64,000 bases of DNA from Epiperipatus broadwayi (lineage: Eukaryota; Animalia; Onychophora), in NCBI GenBank assembly GCA_028023455.1, contig JAQFVV010000008.1, positions 12,524,001 through 12,588,000 of the forward strand, read 5' to 3'. The stretch's first letter is position 1, and every line of letters begins with the position of its first letter. Below are positions 4,524 through 37,449 of the stretch, one piece after another. The position numbers were made by a program, and so were the translations under genes. A model generated the notes under the pieces. That model was not told the DNA's origin, made no database searches, and saw only the letters and a list, made by a program, of their open reading frames with translations.

Positions 4524-6129
4524 CATGTTAGTTTGGAGGATTATGCTACTCCATAATTCTCAAATAATAAAAAGCATGAGATTGCATATTAATTATAAAA
4601 CTACTATGGGCAGCTTGCCTCTGACCATACAATGAATAACTGATTATAGACACATCATATATAAAGCAAATAATATATATATATTCAACATTGCTGCTAC
4701 ATTTAATTAAAATATTGCCAATTTATTTTAATAAAATAATTAACTGAAATTTATTTTAACTAAGAAGATTACAACAAAATGAATATTAGTTTTAAAAAAC
4801 CTATTTCCCATTTATAATTTCTTTACATGAAGTTAAAAATGACAGTTAAGATTTCAATCTTCAAAGGCAGGATTAAAAAAAAATGTTTTTATGATTATGA
4901 ATTGTTTGCAAAACAAATTATAAAATGATAAAATAATAGATATTAAAAATTTTTCAATATTGCATATAAATTTAAAAAAAATAAAAATTGAAATATAAAC
5001 CTTAAAAAAAAAAAGTAAATTAAAATCAAAGCATTACACAGATACTAGGATTCAATGATCACTCATCCTTACATAAATGCTAAAATAGGGTGATTTTAAA
5101 AGTGTAGATTATGTAAGCCTGTATTATAGAATATATTTCTTTCATCTGAAAAATATTCTATTGATGTTCTTTTCAAAATATTTAAAGCAAATCTTTTTAA
5201 CAGGCCTTAAAAATGTAAGTGGAAACTTTTCTTGTGACTATTTCTTGAAGATGACAAAAAAGCAATCACCTTTTTTGTTTGAAGTCACCTGCAAAAGATG
5301 TATTATATATGTATACTTTTTTTTTCCTATTCCATTCCTTAAAAATCCTCTTAATTTTCTTCACTAATTATTCACAATTTTTTAGTTAGTTATCATTAAT
5401 CCTAAACAAATTCGTAAGACTATCATAATTTTTCACATTACATATACTCCAATTATTATTATCACTACGAGCCATTTGTAAATGTGGCCATTCTAACTCC
5501 ACACACACAAAATATATGCAAATAAATACAAATAAAAAATGAAGATCAGTTTTGTGATTATACATGTTTACATAATCATGGTGATCCTAGACTGTTTATT
5601 TGATTCATATTCTATGGTAAATTTTCTTTCTAAAAGTCTTTAATACCTTACCTATTTGCATATCTCCATTCTATCTTTAGCTATAAAATTAATTGAGGGT
5701 ACTTTTTTTGTATATCTCTACTATATTCTATCTTTAACCATATACTCACAATAAAATCAATTGATAACACCTTTTTTTTTCTCTCTGAGGTAATCATTAT
5801 AATGTAAATAGGTTCTGTTTTTCACAGGAAATCAATACAACTTTACTTAAAATGTTTTTTACAAAATATATTATTCATTCACTTCATATAATGTATATTT
5901 ACAATAGTACACACAATACCACCTAACCAAAAAGTTGAAGAACACCAACCAAATGAACTACATTTCTACCATTGGTTCACTATCTTTTTTAAAACGATTT
6001 TGGTAATAAATGCTTTACTTGATAAATATAGGGGATTTGAACTCAGACTTTCAAGCACTTTTCAACTATCCACACTATCACATACCACTGATACACATGA
6101 TCACACACATGTAGAAAAGATCAATAATC

Positions 6130-6176
6130 ACCAATATACGTATTTCATGCTGAACCAGCACTCATCATCAGTTGAT
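6130..6176 (-). ncRNA. Minimal type I hammerhead ribozyme motif (F1)
   Basis: Minus strand reads AUCAA CUGAUGA [uga] GUGCUG guu CAGCAU GAAA UACGUAU A UUGGU. Stem III AUACGUAU is self-complementary. There is a 3 nt insertion after the core. Confidence 0.75.
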
Positions 6177-6203
6177 CCAGATTATCATCTCTCACCCATA
6201 TAT

Positions 6204-6243
6204 ATGATGATTGCTGTTTCAGTACGAAATACATATATTGGTG
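6204..6243 (+). ncRNA. Second, degenerate hammerhead motif on the opposite arm (F1)
   Basis: AUGAUGA UUGCUG uuu CAGUAC GAAA UACAUAU A UUGGU. C3 and the 5' strand of stem I are lost at the inversion junction. Confidence 0.6.
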
Positions 6244-9200
6244 ATTATTGATCTTTTCTACATGTGTGTGATCATGTGTATCAGTGATATGAGATAGTGT
6301 GGATAGTTGAAGGTGCTTGAAAGTCTGAGTTCAAATCCCCTATATTTACAATTAAGCTCCAGGTATATGAAGAGTGCCTGTATTTCAAATATTACTTGAT
6401 AAATCTAAATCTTTTGTTTCTTAGTAAATTCCCTTATTTTTAAACTTTCCAGTCTTGCTTTAAGCAAGATTCACTCATTCTACTCTTGTCATAAATATCT
6501 TTAACTTCAAGACTGATCTTATTTTGATATTATTTATTTTTAATTTTACATAAGATTTTTTATTTTATTTTCACTTATTAAGTGATTATCTGTTCTTTTA
6601 TTTTTACAAAAGTACATTAAACTATATTCATTACCTAATGTTTCTGCACATCTTAATACCTATCTTAATCAATTCATATGTTTTTTCAATTAATCCAAAC
6701 TAATATTATTCTTGCAATCTGATCCTGTCTGTAAATAATAAATCCTGCAAATGTTACAATGTTAACATTTCTCAAATGAAATAATAATTATCCTAGTTCT
6801 TCTTATACAGTTTTATTCACTGTCCAAACACTTTCTCCAAGTGTGTATCTACTCCATTTCTTTCTGAATCTTATCCAAATTAACCAATACATCATTTCTG
6901 TAAATACTGTTACACTTTTCTATAAAGTTCTACTTTTGTAATATTTATTATAAAAAAAACAAATACATTTATATTACCCCCTCCCTTTAGTTTTCAATAT
7001 CAAGTTGTTGTTTTTTAATTCTGTGTTCCTTTATATATATTAATTTTGGTTCCTTTATTATTGTTATTTTCTAATTTATTTATTATTTTTGCCTTTTTAT
7101 TAGACTTTTCTCTTTTTCTATATTTTAAATATTCAAATCTTTTTACTTAGTGAAAAGCATCACAATTATCTATAAATTCTGGTATCTTATATTTATCATT
7201 ACTTTTATGATTAGATTTTTATCTTCTATATCTATCTTAATTTATTTTCTAATTTCTTTCAATATAATAAACACATGATAATCAATAAAAGTAAGAAGGA
7301 ATCCTATCTAAAGGCTATCTTACTTTTCCCCTTAATTTCCCCTAGTTGATATATAGTTTTTTAAATAAATGCCATAGATCTTTCACAATCCAATTTTGAT
7401 TAACTTAAATCATAAAATGTTCTAAATATCTAATGTCTGAAGCTATCCTAGCACCTCTGTGAGGCGTGACAAAGCACAAAATCATGGTCAGAGGTTTGGG
7501 GGGAGGGGTTCCTGACAGAGATATTTTAAATACTTTCTCTGGCTAAGCATTTATCACAAAGCTTGTTGAGCAATTAGCAATGCTCATTGTATATATCTTA
7601 CAAGCTTAAGAGAATTGGGTCGTGTGATCTATGACTCTTATTTTGACTATCCAGTCTTGTACTTTTTCTATATTTAAAATAACTTCATTTGCTTTTCTAA
7701 TTAATCTATGAATTACTTTCAAAATTGTGTTAATACATATATAATTATCAATTCTATAAATTATAAATCCATCTTGTATTTATCTTATTTTGTGATTGTT
7801 TCACAATACCTTAAATTTATTTATAGTAATATATGTTAATTTATGCGTAATTGGTGTTATTACTACTGCTACAGTAAGTTAAATTTCTAATAAAAATTAA
7901 CATTTTTTTACATTCTTTCAAATTTCTGAATTAATTCTTTGATGTGCAATGTGTTAAAATAATTAAGTAATGACATAAAAAGGTTTTTACCCTATTGAGG
8001 TCATTTCATTAGATAATTCAACTGATTTTTTTTCACTTTAACATTCATAACTTATAAAGTGCTTGTAATAGCTTTTCCATTTGAGATTAACACTTTTTAG
8101 ATTTTTTACTTCTTTAGTACATTATTCTAATTTGGACTTTTTAAAAAAATCTCAATTCTTTTAAATAGATATTTAAAAGATTTTCTATTTTTCTTTTCTC
8201 TTAAATATTTTTTTATTTTTAATAAATTAATCTTTTCATTAAATCAACATTTATATTTAATAAGCTTCTAGATTTTTTTATAACAATTTCCTATGTATTG
8301 TTTATACTAACTCTACTTTTTTTTTTTTATTTAATCTAATTTTTTTCTTACTTCTGTTTTGTTTTTCTCTTCTAATCGTATTTTCTATTTATTTTCTCTG
8401 CTCTTAGTTTTTTCTTACCTTCGTTTTTATATTCTCTATGTATTCAAAAAAATTCTTTCACCTGATAAATTATTCTGAAAACATTTACTATTTAAATAAA
8501 ATCAAGGAGAACAAAAAAAATACAAACTTTTCTAGCAAAAAGTTTTGAGAAATGTTGAAGAGTATATCATTTTCAAAAGGACATGAAAATTCAAAGAAAA
8601 ACAAAGCAGGATGAATACTATTGGATAATTAAACTACTCTTCGTAACTATTAGGAAATACAAAACTGCTTAGCATAGGAAAAAAAAATGAAGAAAAACAA
8701 TTTATTTATTACATTTGTCATATGGTAGTATTTTAGATAACAACACTATCAAGAAAGAAAATACAATATTCCCTCTAAATCATCGGTTTCAATTATCCAT
8801 GACGGACACAAAAAAATTAACATTAAAAAAGAAAAAATAATAATTCTACACTATTTTTGTTCACAGTGAGTATACAATAACATTTAAAACATGTATATAC
8901 ATATACTTAATATATAAAATTGATTAAAAACCTTTATATGGTTTGATATTATTTGTGACCAATATTTATGACATGACTTGGAATATAGAGAATAAAAGTT
9001 TACATCTATCCAAAATTAAAATGTATATTACCTTAAAAAATCCTTATGCTATGAGAGTAAAATTTAACTTAAAAAAATCTTTAGAATCGCTATGAATATA
9101 CATACTTAAATCAACAAAAGGCAAATAGTCTGTTACAAAAAGATTAAAAACCTATATTTCTACTATCCACTTTTCCTCTCTTCATTTTTTTTTTTAGGAA

Positions 9201-12199: not shown

Positions 12200-12990
12200 T
12201 ATTTGTGAAAAGTTAACCTCAACAATGGCGGATGCTATTTCGTCGAAATGATGGGAAGCAAAAATAACACACGGTTTAACCCAAAAACTACTTTATTTAC
12301 ATTATATAACTATGAAAACATTAAATATAATATATATAAAGTACAACTTTAAAATTTTTATTTATAAGGAGCACTTCCAACTAGCTTCGTAGTCTTTGTC
12401 AACTAACACTTTCAAAGTGTAACTTTCCCACAATTCATTGATTTTTACTTTTGCTGCCTGTCTGTTTATTAAGTCATGCTTACATTTGTATATTAACATA
12501 GCTTCCTTTATTTTCCTTTTATTATTGTTTCTTTCACTTTGTAATATTTTCACACTATCATACTCCAAATTAAAAAACATATATATATAATCTATTATGA
12601 TCATAAAAACCACTAAAAATTAAAAACATATATACATAATCTATTTTGATCATAAAAACCCGATGTTGAAATATTATCAATGTTTCAACATCGGTTTTTT
12701 ACAATCATAATAGATTATGTATATATGGTTTTAATTTGGAGTATGATAATGTGAAAATATTACAAATTGAAAGAAACAATAATAAAAGGAAAATAAAGAA
12801 AGCTATGTTAACATATAAATGTAAGCATGACTTAATAAACAGATAGGCAGCAAAAATAAAAATCAATAAATTGTGGTAAGGTTAGATTTGAAAGTGTGTT
12901 TGAAAGTGTTAATTGAGAAAGACTACGAAACTAATCGAAAGCACTCCTAGATGGATAAAAGTTTTTAAAGTTGTACTTCATATATATTAC
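12200..12990. mobile_element. Head-to-head inverted pair of 5'-truncated Penelope 3' ends (family F3)
   Basis: Arms of ~330 bp (~12335-12670 and ~12682-12990) around an 11 nt loop (tattatcaatg). Each arm encodes a GIY-YIG C-terminal peptide. The left arm has a ~45 bp tandem duplication (12570-12660) and CpG-containing sequence extending to ~12200. Confidence 0.8.
12362..12613 (-). pseudogene. Penelope GIY-YIG endonuclease C-terminal fragment
   Basis: The ORF-track peptide FNLEYDSVKILQSERNNNKRKIKEAMLIYKCKHDLINRQAAKVKINELW matches the H-x-F-D-x3-VKIL-x2-E-x4-KR-x2-KEA-x2-I pattern of PLE endonuclease C-termini. The mirror copy on + (12730-12880) has an internal stop. Confidence 0.8.
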
Positions 12991-13181
12991 TCTATTTATT
13001 GATATTTAATTACAAAATTATGTATATAACTTCAAAGAAATACAGATATCAAATAAGAACATCATTATATATATATACAATCTAAACCATTTTATGGTAA
13101 ATAAAGAGTAAATTTATCTACTAATATAAAACAAAAAGAATGAATTGTATTTATTTGTTGGACTATTTCCATGTATGTACC

Positions 13182-13393
13182 AAGGAACATATGTTATATT
13201 GGGAAAATACAAAAATATTGGCTAGAGAGGAAAGGTACAAAGATTTTGTAGAAAATTCAAAGAAGCTGCTCATATGACTATGGCAAATAACTCTATAAGT
13301 CAACCTAGTATAATTATACATAATGTATGGAAACCACTAATGACTTTGCTCTTAAAAAAAAAAAGAAGAAAACAGGAGGAAATTCAGAGATAA
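13182..13393 (+). pseudogene. Penelope GIY-YIG endonuclease C-terminus with one frameshift
   Basis: KEHMLYWENTKILAREERYK, then a frameshift, then RKFKEAAHMTMANNSISQPSIIIHNVWKPLMTLLLKKKRRKQEEIQR*. The RK-x-KEAAHM...ISQPS...W-x-PL pattern is what I recognise from PLE endonuclease tails. Confidence 0.8.
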
Positions 13394-13425
13394 GTATATG
13401 AAATTTCTAATGATTGCTGCCTTTG

Positions 13426-13503
13426 GAAGAATGGTTCAGTTGATTAGAGCATTACCTTCAAATTCAATAATCTAAGGGTCCAGGTTTGATTCTCATGCTA
13501 GTA
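13426..13503 (+). promoter_or_regulatory. tRNA-derived Pol III internal promoter-like segment (A and B box)
   Basis: tggttcagttgattagagc resembles the tRNA A box/D arm, and ggtttgattctc resembles the B box GGTTCGANTCC with CpG decay. The spacing is tRNA-like but it does not fold as an intact cloverleaf. Confidence 0.65.
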
Positions 13504-13523
13504 CTGTCACTGGTCAGGCCAGC

Positions 13524-13570
13524 AACACTTGAAGAAGAAAGGAGAATAATATTGCTTAAAATGTTATGTG
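13524..13570 (+). ncRNA. Decayed hammerhead motif
   Basis: acac TTGAAGA agaaaggagaataatattgct TAAAATGTT atgtg. Together with the 37261 copy this reconstructs to acac CTGAAGA A GAGAGGT gaataat ACCTCTC GAAA CGTT gtgt (inferred consensus). Confidence 0.55.
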
Positions 13571-14735
13571 TATATACTAACCTGTGTGCTATTACTAACA
13601 GTTGAATGTTTGGAAAGTTAAATAAAGATATTCAATACTTAAAAAAAAAAAAATGATGGAAATAGTCCAACAAATAAATACAACTAAAATATCATAATCA
13701 TAAACCTTCAGGAAAACAAAAAGAATGAATGCCTTGGAAATTTATAGATTAAAAAAAAAAGGAAGACAAATAAACCATGTATTATATAAACTAAATATTA
13801 ATACTGTATAGTTTGTATAAAAGCAGCTGATTGTCAGCCTTACCAGTCTTTCTCTAAATACAAATTATAGTAAAATCAATCATTTTTAGCAATTTATCAA
13901 ATGATAATTTTTTAAAAAAATGATAAATGGTTTAATAGAATAGTATAATCCAAACTTTAAAGATATTTAAAAAATAAAATAAAATGACAACTGGCATCCT
14001 ATGCATATATAAATGACACACATAGACATTTGTAGTTGGTCCATAATTAACAGAATGAAATGCCTAGTATTTTCAAAAGCATACTTTACAATGTATGCAC
14101 ATAGATCCAAATAAATTTAACACAATACAAAATTTTAGGAAATAAAAAACTATATTATTAGATATAGTTTAAATAACTTGCAATGACCAGTTTATTGTTA
14201 TTTTTAAATCAATATTGATTTCTCAACAATTATATGAATGGGATTTATGAACAGGTTCCTTTCAAAATAGCTTGAAATGATGTTTTGCTGTTGATACAGC
14301 TGAGATTAACTGCCACCAACATCAATTACCTTGCTCTATTTAATATAAATATTAATAATAAAACATTAAGAAAATATAAACAAAACAAATACAATAGAAG
14401 AAAATAAGGTGATATAAAAGAAAGTCAATGAAGACAAGAAAAAGATAGATCCTCCTTATGAAAGTTATTATAAATGAAAAAGTGCAATTTAATACTGAAT
14501 ACATTTTAATTTAAAAGAAAGTATAGATGAATAAAATTATGAATAGCTATATTAACACATTATAACAGTATATTAAAATATTAAGTTTGCATCCTTTCAG
14601 ATTTTTTAATTATCTTATAACAATCTATCATTCAATGATGTATATATTCACAATTTATTTAGATAAATTATTTTCTTAAAAAAAAGTTGTATTATGTAAG
14701 ATAACCTAAGAATTTGTATTTAATTGACTTTGATA

Positions 14736-37167: not shown

Positions 37168-37449
37168 AGAATAATCTAGTTGGGTAGAACATCATCTTAT
37201 ATTCAGTATTAATAAATCTAAAGGTTTTTGGTTTAGTACTATCACCAATCTGGAAAGCATCACCTAAAGAAGAGAGGTGAATAATACCATTCAAAACATT
37301 TTACACTAATTTGCATGTTATTAGTGACAGTTGAATGTGTTAATTAAAAAAGTGTAAATAAAATGTGAATTTTTAAAAAAATATTTAATAAACTAAATGA
37401 TGGAAATAATCCAACATAAAATTATTTTAAAATGCTAACAAACTTTCAG
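37168..37449 (+). mobile_element. Solo tRNA-head + hammerhead + Penelope-tail module (SINE/retrozyme-like)
   Basis: Collinear with 13426-13712: ctagttgggtagaac, tagtact(a/g)tcac, gaagaaga..gg.gaataata, acagttgaatgt, aaatgatggaaata.tccaaca, aaac.ttcag. The upstream endonuclease remnant is absent. Confidence 0.72.
37261..37305 (+). ncRNA. Decayed hammerhead motif
   Basis: cac CTAAAGA A GAGAGGT gaataat ACCATTC AAAA CATT. Stem II pairs at 6/7. CGAAACGTT to CAAAACATT is explained by two CpG transitions. Confidence 0.62.

What the first reader, a model, noticed from the sequence alone, without database searches (positions are those of the whole stretch)
13128..13730. Penelope 3' end containing a tRNA-like Pol III promoter directly upstream of its hammerhead
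Seen, in order inside one 18 bp TSD: 28 bp inverted arm, endonuclease C-terminus, stop at 13393, tRNA-like A/B boxes (13426-13503), hammerhead remnant (13524-13570), A-rich stretch, the 28 bp repeat, 29 bp tail. The A13 run is internal rather than a poly(A) tail, because the 37.2 kb copy continues identically past it. Known: Schistosoma Sm-alpha repeats combine a tRNA-like promoter with a hammerhead. I am not aware of this module being described inside a Penelope pseudo-LTR. Inference: a PLE captured a Pol III promoter, which would let its pLTR be transcribed alone.
Basis: partly seen in the sequence, partly recalled or inferred. Interest (0 to 1): 0.9.

Follow-up and report, generated by a model that had tools for sequence, protein, structure and literature searches.

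The report
Penelope retrotransposon tail with tRNA-like promoter
This is an old, broken copy of a very abundant Penelope-like jumping gene whose 3' end carries a tRNA-derived promoter-like block just before its hammerhead ribozyme in every copy examined, which would explain how short SINE-like offshoots of the element arose.

Summary
From 13128 to 13730 the order is:
- an 18-bp direct repeat
- a 28-nt inverted arm
- the GIY-YIG C-terminus, ending at TAA 13391-13393
- a tRNA-like segment
- a decayed minimal hammerhead
- an internal A13 run
- the 28-nt repeat
- a tail of about 35 nt

It is not a one-off SINE insertion. All 58 ORF-linked copies aligned carry the module. So do 10 young modules next to 817-aa open frames, and these have near-perfect A box, B box and hammerhead core.

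The stretch after the hammerhead is the element's own 5'UTR and start codon, a terminal repeat I call R. The window's 28-nt repeat is ORF codons 2-10.

The window copy is a dead, two-armed insertion of the published Penelope type.

Many older copies begin 0-12 nt upstream of the A box, as expected for a SINE-like form. The youngest subfamily shows no such excess.

Pol III use is unproven, and a T4-T5 run lies inside R. No paper I could search describes this module in a Penelope pseudo-LTR. First readers of this scan noted the same layout elsewhere in this genome.

The parts
13128..13145 (.). Left copy of the target-site duplication (18 nt exact; the first 6 nt, AAAACA, are also the element's consensus 3' end, so 12-18 nt)
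13145..13172 (-). Inverted 5' arm: a 28-nt reverse-complement copy of ORF codons 2-10 (second ATG onward). Its outer end is the family's 'short' 3' end (...AAATACAA) and it has no tail. CCAT (13169-13172) is microhomology with the direct arm.
13169..13393 (+). 5'-truncated direct arm: remnant of the last ~75 codons of the GIY-YIG endonuclease, ending at TAA 13391-13393
13394..13418 (+). Spacer between the stop codon and the tRNA-like head
13419..13503 (+). tRNA-derived segment. Head start 13419 (profile position 245); tRNA +1 equivalent 13425; A box 13432-13443; intact D-arm stem; swollen anticodon region; B box 13483-13493. Both boxes are decayed in this copy.
13504..13567 (+). Minimal type-I hammerhead remnant. 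Helix I 5' strand CAC 13526-13528; core TTGAAGA 13529-13535 (C3 to T); unpaired A 13536; helix II 13537-13557; AAAA 13558-13561 (G12 to A); TGTT 13562-13565. The cleavage-site equivalent is after 13565.
13568..13718 (+). R, the terminal repeat: the element's 5'UTR, start codons (ATG 13653-13655 and 13656-13658) and first ~21 codons. It contains the internal A13 run (13641-13653). The family's T5 run is deleted in this copy. The last ~35 nt (13684-13718) are the one-sided Penelope 'tail'.
13713..13730 (.). Right copy of the target-site duplication

Best explanation
Window 13145-13718 is one old insertion of a Penelope-like retrotransposon (RT plus C-terminal GIY-YIG). It was laid down in the published two-armed way: a 28-nt inverted arm without tail, then a 550-nt 5'-truncated direct arm with tail, inside a 12-18-bp target duplication.

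The family unit is about 2.85 kb. Its order is R (5'UTR of about 105 nt plus start codon), an 817-codon ORF, the stop, about 30 nt of spacer, a tRNA-derived A/B-box block, a minimal dimer-type hammerhead, and R again. The tRNA-like block is therefore a fixed part of the element's pseudo-LTR.

Inferred mechanism:
1. The A/B boxes act as an internal Pol III-type promoter. It sets a start about 6 nt before the tRNA +1 position, equivalent to window 13419.
2. The pLTR alone then yields an RNA of about 320 nt: head, hammerhead, R.
3. That RNA ends in the same R that the element's RT/EN uses, so it is copied in trans as a SINE-like form.

Shown here: the anatomy, its presence throughout the family, the intact motifs in young copies, and the discrete class of 5' ends.
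Inferred only: which polymerase acts, hammerhead cleavage, and mobilisation in trans.
For: Element identity:
- RVT_1 scores 55 bits in an 817-aa open frame. GIY-YIG scores 25.6 bits against a cutoff of 22.6 in another copy, and the CIYEIPC...YIGET motif is present in the intact copy. The motif ILPADKGNATVV is present.
- 578 homologues were found, about 45-48% identical over 95-98% of the length, with RVT_1, DUF8422 and PF26215 domains, from insects, corals, echinoderms and vertebrates.

The module is family-wide:
- All 30 aligned copies carry it, as do all 58 ORF-linked copies in the larger set.
- Of 10 young modules, 9 have A box TGGCTCAGTTGG, 9 have B box GGTTCGAATCC 46 nt further on, and 8 have the complete CTGAAGA-A-helix II-GAAACGTT-GTG.
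- The differences in older copies sit at CpG sites.

tRNA likeness:
- Rfam's tRNA model aligns end to end at 15.8-16.3 bits.
- ARAGORN at 80% thresholds of 71 heads, against 2 of 71 shuffled controls.

Hammerhead: it has the traits published for PLE minimal hammerheads, namely an unpaired nucleotide 5' of helix II, a long helix II, a short helix I and no helix III.

Discrete 5' ends:
- Among 98 local copies, 0 start at profile positions 233-244 and 13 start at 245-257.
- Genome-wide, the 27-mer at 233-259 gives 9,896 hits and the 27-mer at 248-274 gives 14,017, with near-equal retention in the calibration set (17/30 and 18/30).
- Retention-corrected copy estimates are 12.5k, 13.8k, 25.6k and 30k at positions 141, 209, 328 and 424.
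- Two long ORF-bearing arms also start at positions 241 and 245.

Head-start copies are scattered among ORF-linked ones on the tree: 10 label changes against a shuffled mean of 12.1.

R equals the 5' end of the element.
Against: - No transcription data. The two runs found are contigs of uncertain type.
- A T4-T5 run, a Pol III terminator in animals, lies inside R about 95 nt before the 3' end. It is present in 12 of 13 head-start copies and 51 of 58 ORF-linked copies, yet almost no copy ends there.
- In the youngest subfamily the counts across the head start are equal, 2,949 against 2,898. There is no measurable recent SINE-form output.
- The tRNA-like block is no better conserved among copies than its flanks.
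- The acceptor stem, T stem and anticodon stem are lost, and the scores are below Rfam's gathering threshold.
- Retention was calibrated on only 30 copies chosen for likeness to the window copy, so subfamily mix could bias the count profile.
- The tree is poorly resolved (38 of 68 inner branches are open).
Confidence: 0.5

Rival explanations
1. Passenger relic. A pre-existing tRNA-headed hammerhead SINE was joined to the PLE once, by RT template switching at the shared tail, and has been carried along since without any promoter role in the PLE. On this view, head-start copies come from separate SINE source genes that share the tail.
For: Several tRNA-headed hammerhead SINE families are noted elsewhere in this genome. 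K-mer depth over the B-box-to-hammerhead core is 10-30 times that of the ORF end in laid contigs, which suggests many other families share that core. The young PLE subfamily shows no head-start excess. The head is not better conserved than its flanks.
Against: Head-start copies do not form their own clade; they lie among ORF-linked copies at several depths of the tree. The boxes and the 46-nt spacing are near-perfect in 10 young modules although they include fast-decaying CpGs. The linkage is old, because ORF-linked copies also occur among the most diverged kin.
Confidence: 0.3
2. The discrete 5' end at the head is the element's ordinary Pol II start site in the pseudo-LTR, as in Drosophila Penelope. 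The tRNA-like sequence is incidental or serves as a Pol II promoter element. Short copies are pLTR-only Pol II transcripts.
For: In Penelope and Chlamys the pLTR holds the TSS (Craig et al. 2021). Two long arms run from the head start through hammerhead, R and the ORF. The internal T run is no obstacle for Pol II.
Against: The start lies about 13 nt before a canonical A box with a canonical B box 46 nt on, which is the geometry of type-2 Pol III genes. The long arms can equally arise by an R-mediated jump of RT from a full-length RNA onto a short head-start RNA. T runs are depleted on the sense strand: 5 observed against 11.7 +/- 2.8 in shuffles, with 3 of 500 shuffles as low.
Confidence: 0.15
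3. One-off event: a SINE inserted into this single Penelope copy, or the A/B boxes are a chance resemblance.
For: In the window copy alone both boxes carry two mismatches, and no tool calls a tRNA there.
Against: The segment is present at the same place in every ORF-linked copy examined and in intact young copies. The 27-mers of the head occur about 14,000 times in the genome, against 0 for reversed controls.
Confidence: 0.01

Closest known systems
Canonical EN+ Penelope-like elements (Penelope/Poseidon/Neptune type) with minimal hammerheads in their pseudo-LTRs (Cervera & de la Pena 2014, PMC4209133; Craig et al. 2021, PMC8557442)
   Same: [quoted passage not shown] Frequent 5' truncation, partial tandems that form pLTRs, inverted 5' copies, and a one-sided tail of about 30-40 bp. 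Minimal type-I hammerhead with an unpaired nucleotide before helix II and no helix III.
   Different: A tRNA-derived A/B-box block sits between the stop codon and the hammerhead. Neither paper mentions a tRNA-like or Pol III element in a pLTR, and a four-term full-text search found none.
Schistosoma Sm-alpha / Sj-alpha SINE-like repeats (Pol III promoter plus hammerhead; recalled from Ferbeyre et al. 1998, cited)
   Same: A tRNA-like internal promoter is combined with a hammerhead in a short, very abundant non-coding retroelement.
   Different: Sm-alpha has a canonical hammerhead and, to my knowledge (recalled, not checked here), no known coding partner that carries the same module. Here the same module lies inside an ORF-bearing element, and the short form shares its full sequence.
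Animal non-LTR retrozymes as non-autonomous derivatives of PLE pLTRs (Li, Clavereau & Pollet 2026 preprint, 10.64898/2026.07.22.740005)
   Same: Non-coding hammerhead elements related to PLE pLTR sequence and presumed to be mobilised by PLEs.
   Different: Retrozymes are tandem units thought to pass through circular RNA. The preprint has no occurrence of tRNA, Pol III or promoter. Here the short form is dispersed and has a discrete head at A/B boxes.
Cassandra, Helenus and Ajax ('TRIMp3'): LTR retrotransposons with 5S- or tRNA-derived Pol III promoters in their LTRs (Kojima 2024, PMC10886601)
   Same: [quoted passage not shown]
   Different: Those elements are all non-autonomous LTR elements. 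Kojima argues that their autonomous partners should not share the Pol III-bearing repeat. Here a coding element of a different class (PLE) carries it.

Membership tests
Penelope-like element, canonical EN+ type | Reverse transcriptase domain in the single ORF | tested here: met
   RVT_1 scores 55 bits (cutoff 29.6) at residues 347-544 of an 817-aa open frame. A decayed copy gives a weak hit.
Penelope-like element, canonical EN+ type | GIY-YIG endonuclease at the C-terminus of the same ORF | tested here: met
   PF01541 scores 25.6 bits (cutoff 22.6) in L031. CIYEIPCECGRTYIGET...EH...KFKEAAHM is present in the intact ORF. Pfam did not report the domain for that intact copy.
Penelope-like element, canonical EN+ type | PLE-type N-terminal region with the DKG motif | tested here: met
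   ILPADKGNATVV is present. The atlas places the piece with DUF8422 clusters. Homologues carry PF28514, PF00078 and PF26215.
Penelope-like element, canonical EN+ type | Insertion architecture: 5' truncation, partial tandem (pLTR), adjacent inverted 5' copy, one-sided 30-40-bp tail | tested here: met
   Variable 5' ends; upstream partial copies; head-to-head pairs; two 3' ends about 33 nt apart. The window copy shows all of these.
Penelope-like element, canonical EN+ type | RT branches within the PLE clade in a phylogeny | not tested
   No tree was built with reference PLE, LINE and TERT RTs.
Minimal type-I hammerhead of PLEs | Conserved core CUGANGA ... GAAA with H17 and flanking helices I and II | tested here: met
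   8 of 10 young modules have CTGAAGA-A-GAGGGG/CCTCTC-GAAACGTT-GTG, and helix II is predicted in the MFE fold. In the window copy C3 and G12 are mutated.
Minimal type-I hammerhead of PLEs | Recognised by Rfam hammerhead models | tested here: not met
   No hammerhead hit at E <= 10, even on intact copies. I attribute this to the absence of helix III; that reason is my inference and was not checked against the Rfam models.
Minimal type-I hammerhead of PLEs | Self-cleavage (as a dimer) | not testable with these tools
   Only indirect evidence: some arms begin within about 3-22 nt of the predicted site.
tRNA-derived SINE (SINE2-like short form) | A and B boxes at type-2 promoter spacing | tested here: met
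   TGGCTCAGTTGG, a 46-nt gap, then GGTTCGAATCC in 8 of 10 young modules; the other two each carry one substitution. Among the 71 aligned copies 20 keep the A box and 6 keep the B box.
tRNA-derived SINE (SINE2-like short form) | Demonstrable descent from a tRNA | tested here: inconclusive
   Rfam tRNA scores 15.8-16.3 bits against a gathering score of 29. Relaxed ARAGORN heads against 2/71 shuffled, with inconsistent isotypes. The parent tRNA cannot be named.
tRNA-derived SINE (SINE2-like short form) | Discrete 5' end just upstream of the A box | tested here: inconclusive
   Met for the bulk of older copies. Not seen in the youngest subfamily.
tRNA-derived SINE (SINE2-like short form) | No Pol III terminator inside the unit | tested here: not met
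   A T4-T5 run lies at profile positions 473-477 in most copies.
tRNA-derived SINE (SINE2-like short form) | Pol III transcription | not testable with these tools
   The runs found are contigs of uncertain type.

The most novel reading that the evidence does not exclude
The tRNA-like block plus hammerhead works like a retroviral U3 next to R. It rides at the 3' end of the RNA. An R-mediated template jump that makes the pseudo-LTR copies it upstream. There it sets the transcription start at the tRNA head, and the hammerhead then trims off this leader so that the transposition RNA begins at R. This would give the long-unexplained PLE hammerhead a role in 5'-end processing, and would give PLEs a portable Pol III-type promoter that also spins off SINEs.
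Probability: 0.2. Interest if true: 0.85.

Novelty: new variant of a known kind. Interest (0 to 1): 0.6.

Why it matters
The role of the hammerheads that Penelope-like elements carry is still described as unknown, and no SINE partner has been shown for this class.

Here a coding PLE and an abundant SINE-like form share one module: tRNA-type A/B boxes, hammerhead and R. That would tie Sm-alpha-type ribozyme SINEs to PLEs. It would also show how a non-autonomous family can arise directly from the terminal repeat of its parent.

The system is testable. There are thousands of near-identical young copies with intact ORFs and motifs, suitable for asking which polymerase starts at the head and whether the ribozyme defines the 5' end of the RNA.

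Tried and rejected
- ARAGORN at default settings found no tRNA in the window or in 29 loci.
- Rfam found nothing in the window at gathering thresholds. At E-value thresholds it gave only sub-threshold tRNA hits and no hammerhead. The miRNA-family hits are simply the hairpins of head-to-head junctions.
- blastn within the window found no second copy. The 37.2-kb element is too diverged.
- The sequencing-run search returned two coded runs of uncertain type, kept as contigs. Laying them showed that the family is present in both, but nothing about starts, strand or expression.
- I tested whether head-start copies form a separate SINE lineage. The tree did not support this.
- I tested whether the youngest subfamily makes head-start copies. 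There is no excess.
- Helix II pairs show no compensatory changes, only G-U, A-U and A-A states at one pair.
Later sequence came through the fetch from genomes.
- I built no full-length consensus and no repaired ORF. A profile of the 567-nt 3' fragment was used only as a coordinate system.
- The organism was not identified.

Full report
**The observation.**
- The 18-nt direct repeat is exact, at 13128-13145 and 13713-13730.
- The 28-nt inverted pair is exact, at 13145-13172 (-) and 13656-13683 (+). No such match is expected by chance.
- The frame ending at TAA 13391-13393 reads FKEAAHMTMANNSISQPSIIIHNVWKPL...QR*. It is collinear with the C-terminus of an intact ORF of the same family, KFKEAAHMTMAKNPISQPSVTIHNVWKSL...HR*.
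- ARAGORN and Rfam find nothing in the window at normal settings. In this one copy the tRNA-like and hammerhead calls therefore rest on motif remnants.
- There is no close second copy in the window. The element at 37.2 kb is an old relative, not an identical copy.

**The copy belongs to a large family of a longer element.**
A search of the window's own genome (5.6 Gb) found thousands of candidates. Forty were scored at 75-81% identity, and nearly all aligned from window 13169-13173 up to between 13683 and 13727.
The sequences upstream of that point in other copies resemble each other for 130 to more than 1,500 nt, with variable 5' ends. The window copy is therefore 5'-truncated at 13169.
Longer copies encode RVT_1 and, at the C-terminus, GIY-YIG (25.6 bits against a cutoff of 22.6).
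A protein search of the genome then found many young copies with open frames of up to 817 aa, and head-to-tail neighbours spaced 2,846-2,847 nt apart.
One such ORF scores 55 bits for RVT_1. It carries ILPADKGNATVV and CIYEIPC...YIGET motifs. It has 578 homologues of similar length and domain make-up across metazoans.
Together with the insertion architecture described below, this places the family among canonical EN+ Penelope-like elements. I did not build an RT phylogeny.

**The tRNA-like block is a fixed part of the family.**
- In an alignment of 30 copies, all have the same segment between the stop codon and the hammerhead.
- In a larger set, all 58 ORF-linked copies have it.
- The majority sequence has a canonical A box (TGGCTCAGTTGG), a perfect D-arm stem, a swollen anticodon region and a canonical B box (GGTTCGAATCC).
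- The variable positions are CpG sites showing both decay products. That is the pattern expected when old copies decay from a source that had the intact motifs.
- Ten young modules from nine places, next to or upstream of long ORFs, keep these motifs. Nine have that A box (the tenth reads TAGCTCAGTTGG), all have the 46-nt gap, and nine have that B box.
- Rfam's tRNA model aligns over its whole length at 15.8-16.3 bits, below its gathering score. The acceptor 5' strand starts at the equivalent of window 13425.
- ARAGORN at 80% thresholds of 71 heads against 2 of 71 shuffled controls, with inconsistent isotypes.

The segment is therefore tRNA-derived and degenerate. It keeps promoter boxes rather than a tRNA fold, and its parent tRNA cannot be named.

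**The hammerhead.**
Young copies read CAC-CUGAAGA-A-GAGGGG-(9-nt loop)-CCUCUC-GAA-ACGU-U|GUG.
Helix II appears in the minimum-free-energy fold of a natural copy.
Rfam's hammerhead models do not detect it.
In the window copy C3 and G12 are mutated, so it is a remnant.

**What the 'tail' is.**
A 6-kb palindrome of two full-length copies (98.97% identity between the arms) shows this. The roughly 170 nt after the cleavage site are repeated at the 5' end of the element, and they contain its 5'UTR and start codon (ATGATGGAAATAG...).
The unit is therefore R-ORF-stop-spacer-tRNA-like-hammerhead-R.
The window's 28-nt repeat is ORF codons 2-10, and its last ~35 nt are codons 11-21.
Copies end at one of two places about 33 nt apart (33 copies against 51).
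The window's inverted arm stops at the short end, and the direct arm has the long end. This is the one-sided 30-40-bp 'tail' beside an inverted 5'-truncated copy that Craig et al. 2021 describe for PLEs.
Arms of one insertion are sister sequences. Head-to-head pairs are very common among pattern hits.
The consensus 3' end (...CAGGAAAACA) overlaps the right-hand repeat by 6 nt. The target duplication is therefore 12-18 nt, with microhomology at the priming site.

**Is the pLTR copied on its own?**
- Among 98 copies in the loci held, none starts at profile positions 233-244 and 13 start at 245-257. That is 0-13 nt upstream of the A box, and includes palindromes whose two arms both end at GCCTTTGG.
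- Genome-wide 27-mer counts, all with zero hits for the reversed control, give retention-corrected estimates of copies reaching each position:

| Profile position | Region | Estimated copies |
|---|---|---|
| 141 | ORF | about 12.5k |
| 209 | stop and spacer | about 13.8k |
| 328 | just past the B box | about 25.6k |
| 424 | R | about 30k |

- Two 27-mers only 15 nt apart, on either side of the head start, give 9,896 and 14,017 hits at near-equal retention.
- Some thousands of copies therefore begin at the head.
- On a tree of the module these copies are scattered among ORF-linked ones: 10 label changes against a shuffled mean of 12.1.
- Two long arms that run on into the ORF also begin at positions 241 and 245.

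This supports a discrete RNA 5' end at the head of the tRNA-like block, at the distance expected for a type-2 Pol III promoter.

**Evidence against the Pol III reading.**
- A T4-T5 run lies in R about 95 nt before the 3' end in nearly all copies, including head-start ones. Copies do not end there.
- In the youngest subfamily, patterns specific to it give 2,949 hits across the head start and 2,898 inside the head. No recent excess of short forms is visible.
- The head is not better conserved among copies than its flanks.
- The retention calibration rests on 30 copies.
- The tree is poorly resolved.
- No RNA evidence could be obtained.

A Pol II start in the pLTR, or separate SINE source genes that share the module, remain possible.

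**Comparison with what is known.**
All of the following are published:
- PLE hammerheads in pLTRs and the PLE insertion footprint
- retrozymes as PLE derivatives
- Pol III promoters in the LTRs of non-autonomous LTR elements

Sm-alpha, a Pol III-promoter-plus-hammerhead SINE, I know from recall rather than from a paper read here.
None of the papers read mentions a tRNA-like block in a PLE pLTR. A full-text search for Penelope, hammerhead, polymerase III and B box together found no paper. The library does not hold most subscription journals.
Within this scan, first readers noted the same layout elsewhere in this genome (s1-085989, s1-087529). Follow-up agents described the tRNA-headed hammerhead SINE and the head-to-head PLE pairs.

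**Verdict.**
The window copy itself is an ordinary dead PLE insertion.
The family-level architecture, a coding PLE whose pseudo-LTR holds tRNA-type A/B boxes next to its hammerhead, with a matching SINE-like form, is a new variant of a known kind.
Its promoter function is plausible but unproven.

Noticed in passing
window 37168-37449: An old relative of the same module (tRNA-like, hammerhead, R). It begins in the D-loop (profile position 263), part of the B box is deleted, and it is only about 70-76% identical to its nearest kin in the genome. It is not an identical copy of the 13.1-kb element.
   Followed up: partly
window 6000-6350: A head-to-head pair of another hammerhead family. Read outward from the centre, the hammerhead (CTGATGA...GAAA) comes before a B-box-like stretch (GAGTTCAAATCCC). 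This is the opposite order to the family studied here.
   Followed up: no
L066+L067 (G000:C7:1822000-1830600): A 6-kb palindrome of two full-length copies (98.97% identical), each with an 817-codon open frame. The arms start within about 3-22 nt of the position equivalent to the hammerhead cleavage site. The young subfamily has two or three tandem repeats of about 42-64 nt directly after that site.
   Followed up: partly
G000, e.g. C12394:11854161/11857008, C163:2734310/2737156, C70:365288/368134: Head-to-tail neighbours of the ORF-bearing element are spaced 2,846-2,847 nt apart. These are tandem arrays in which every unit is preceded by the tRNA-like block and the hammerhead.
   Followed up: no
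natural full-length copy, L067:665-3659 (plus arm): Runs of four or more T are depleted on the sense strand: 5 observed against 11.7 +/- 2.8 in dinucleotide-preserving shuffles, with 3 of 500 shuffles as low. Runs of A are in excess (56 against 46.6).
   Followed up: partly
window 13464-13550: In contigs of two public runs laid at 80% likeness, summed k-mer depth over the B box to the hammerhead core is about 10-30 times that over the ORF end and R. This suggests that many more repeat families share this core.
   Followed up: no
window 12328-12504 and 12800-12989: An inverted repeat of about 180-190 nt at 82% identity lies just upstream of the insertion. It belongs to some other repeat.
   Followed up: no
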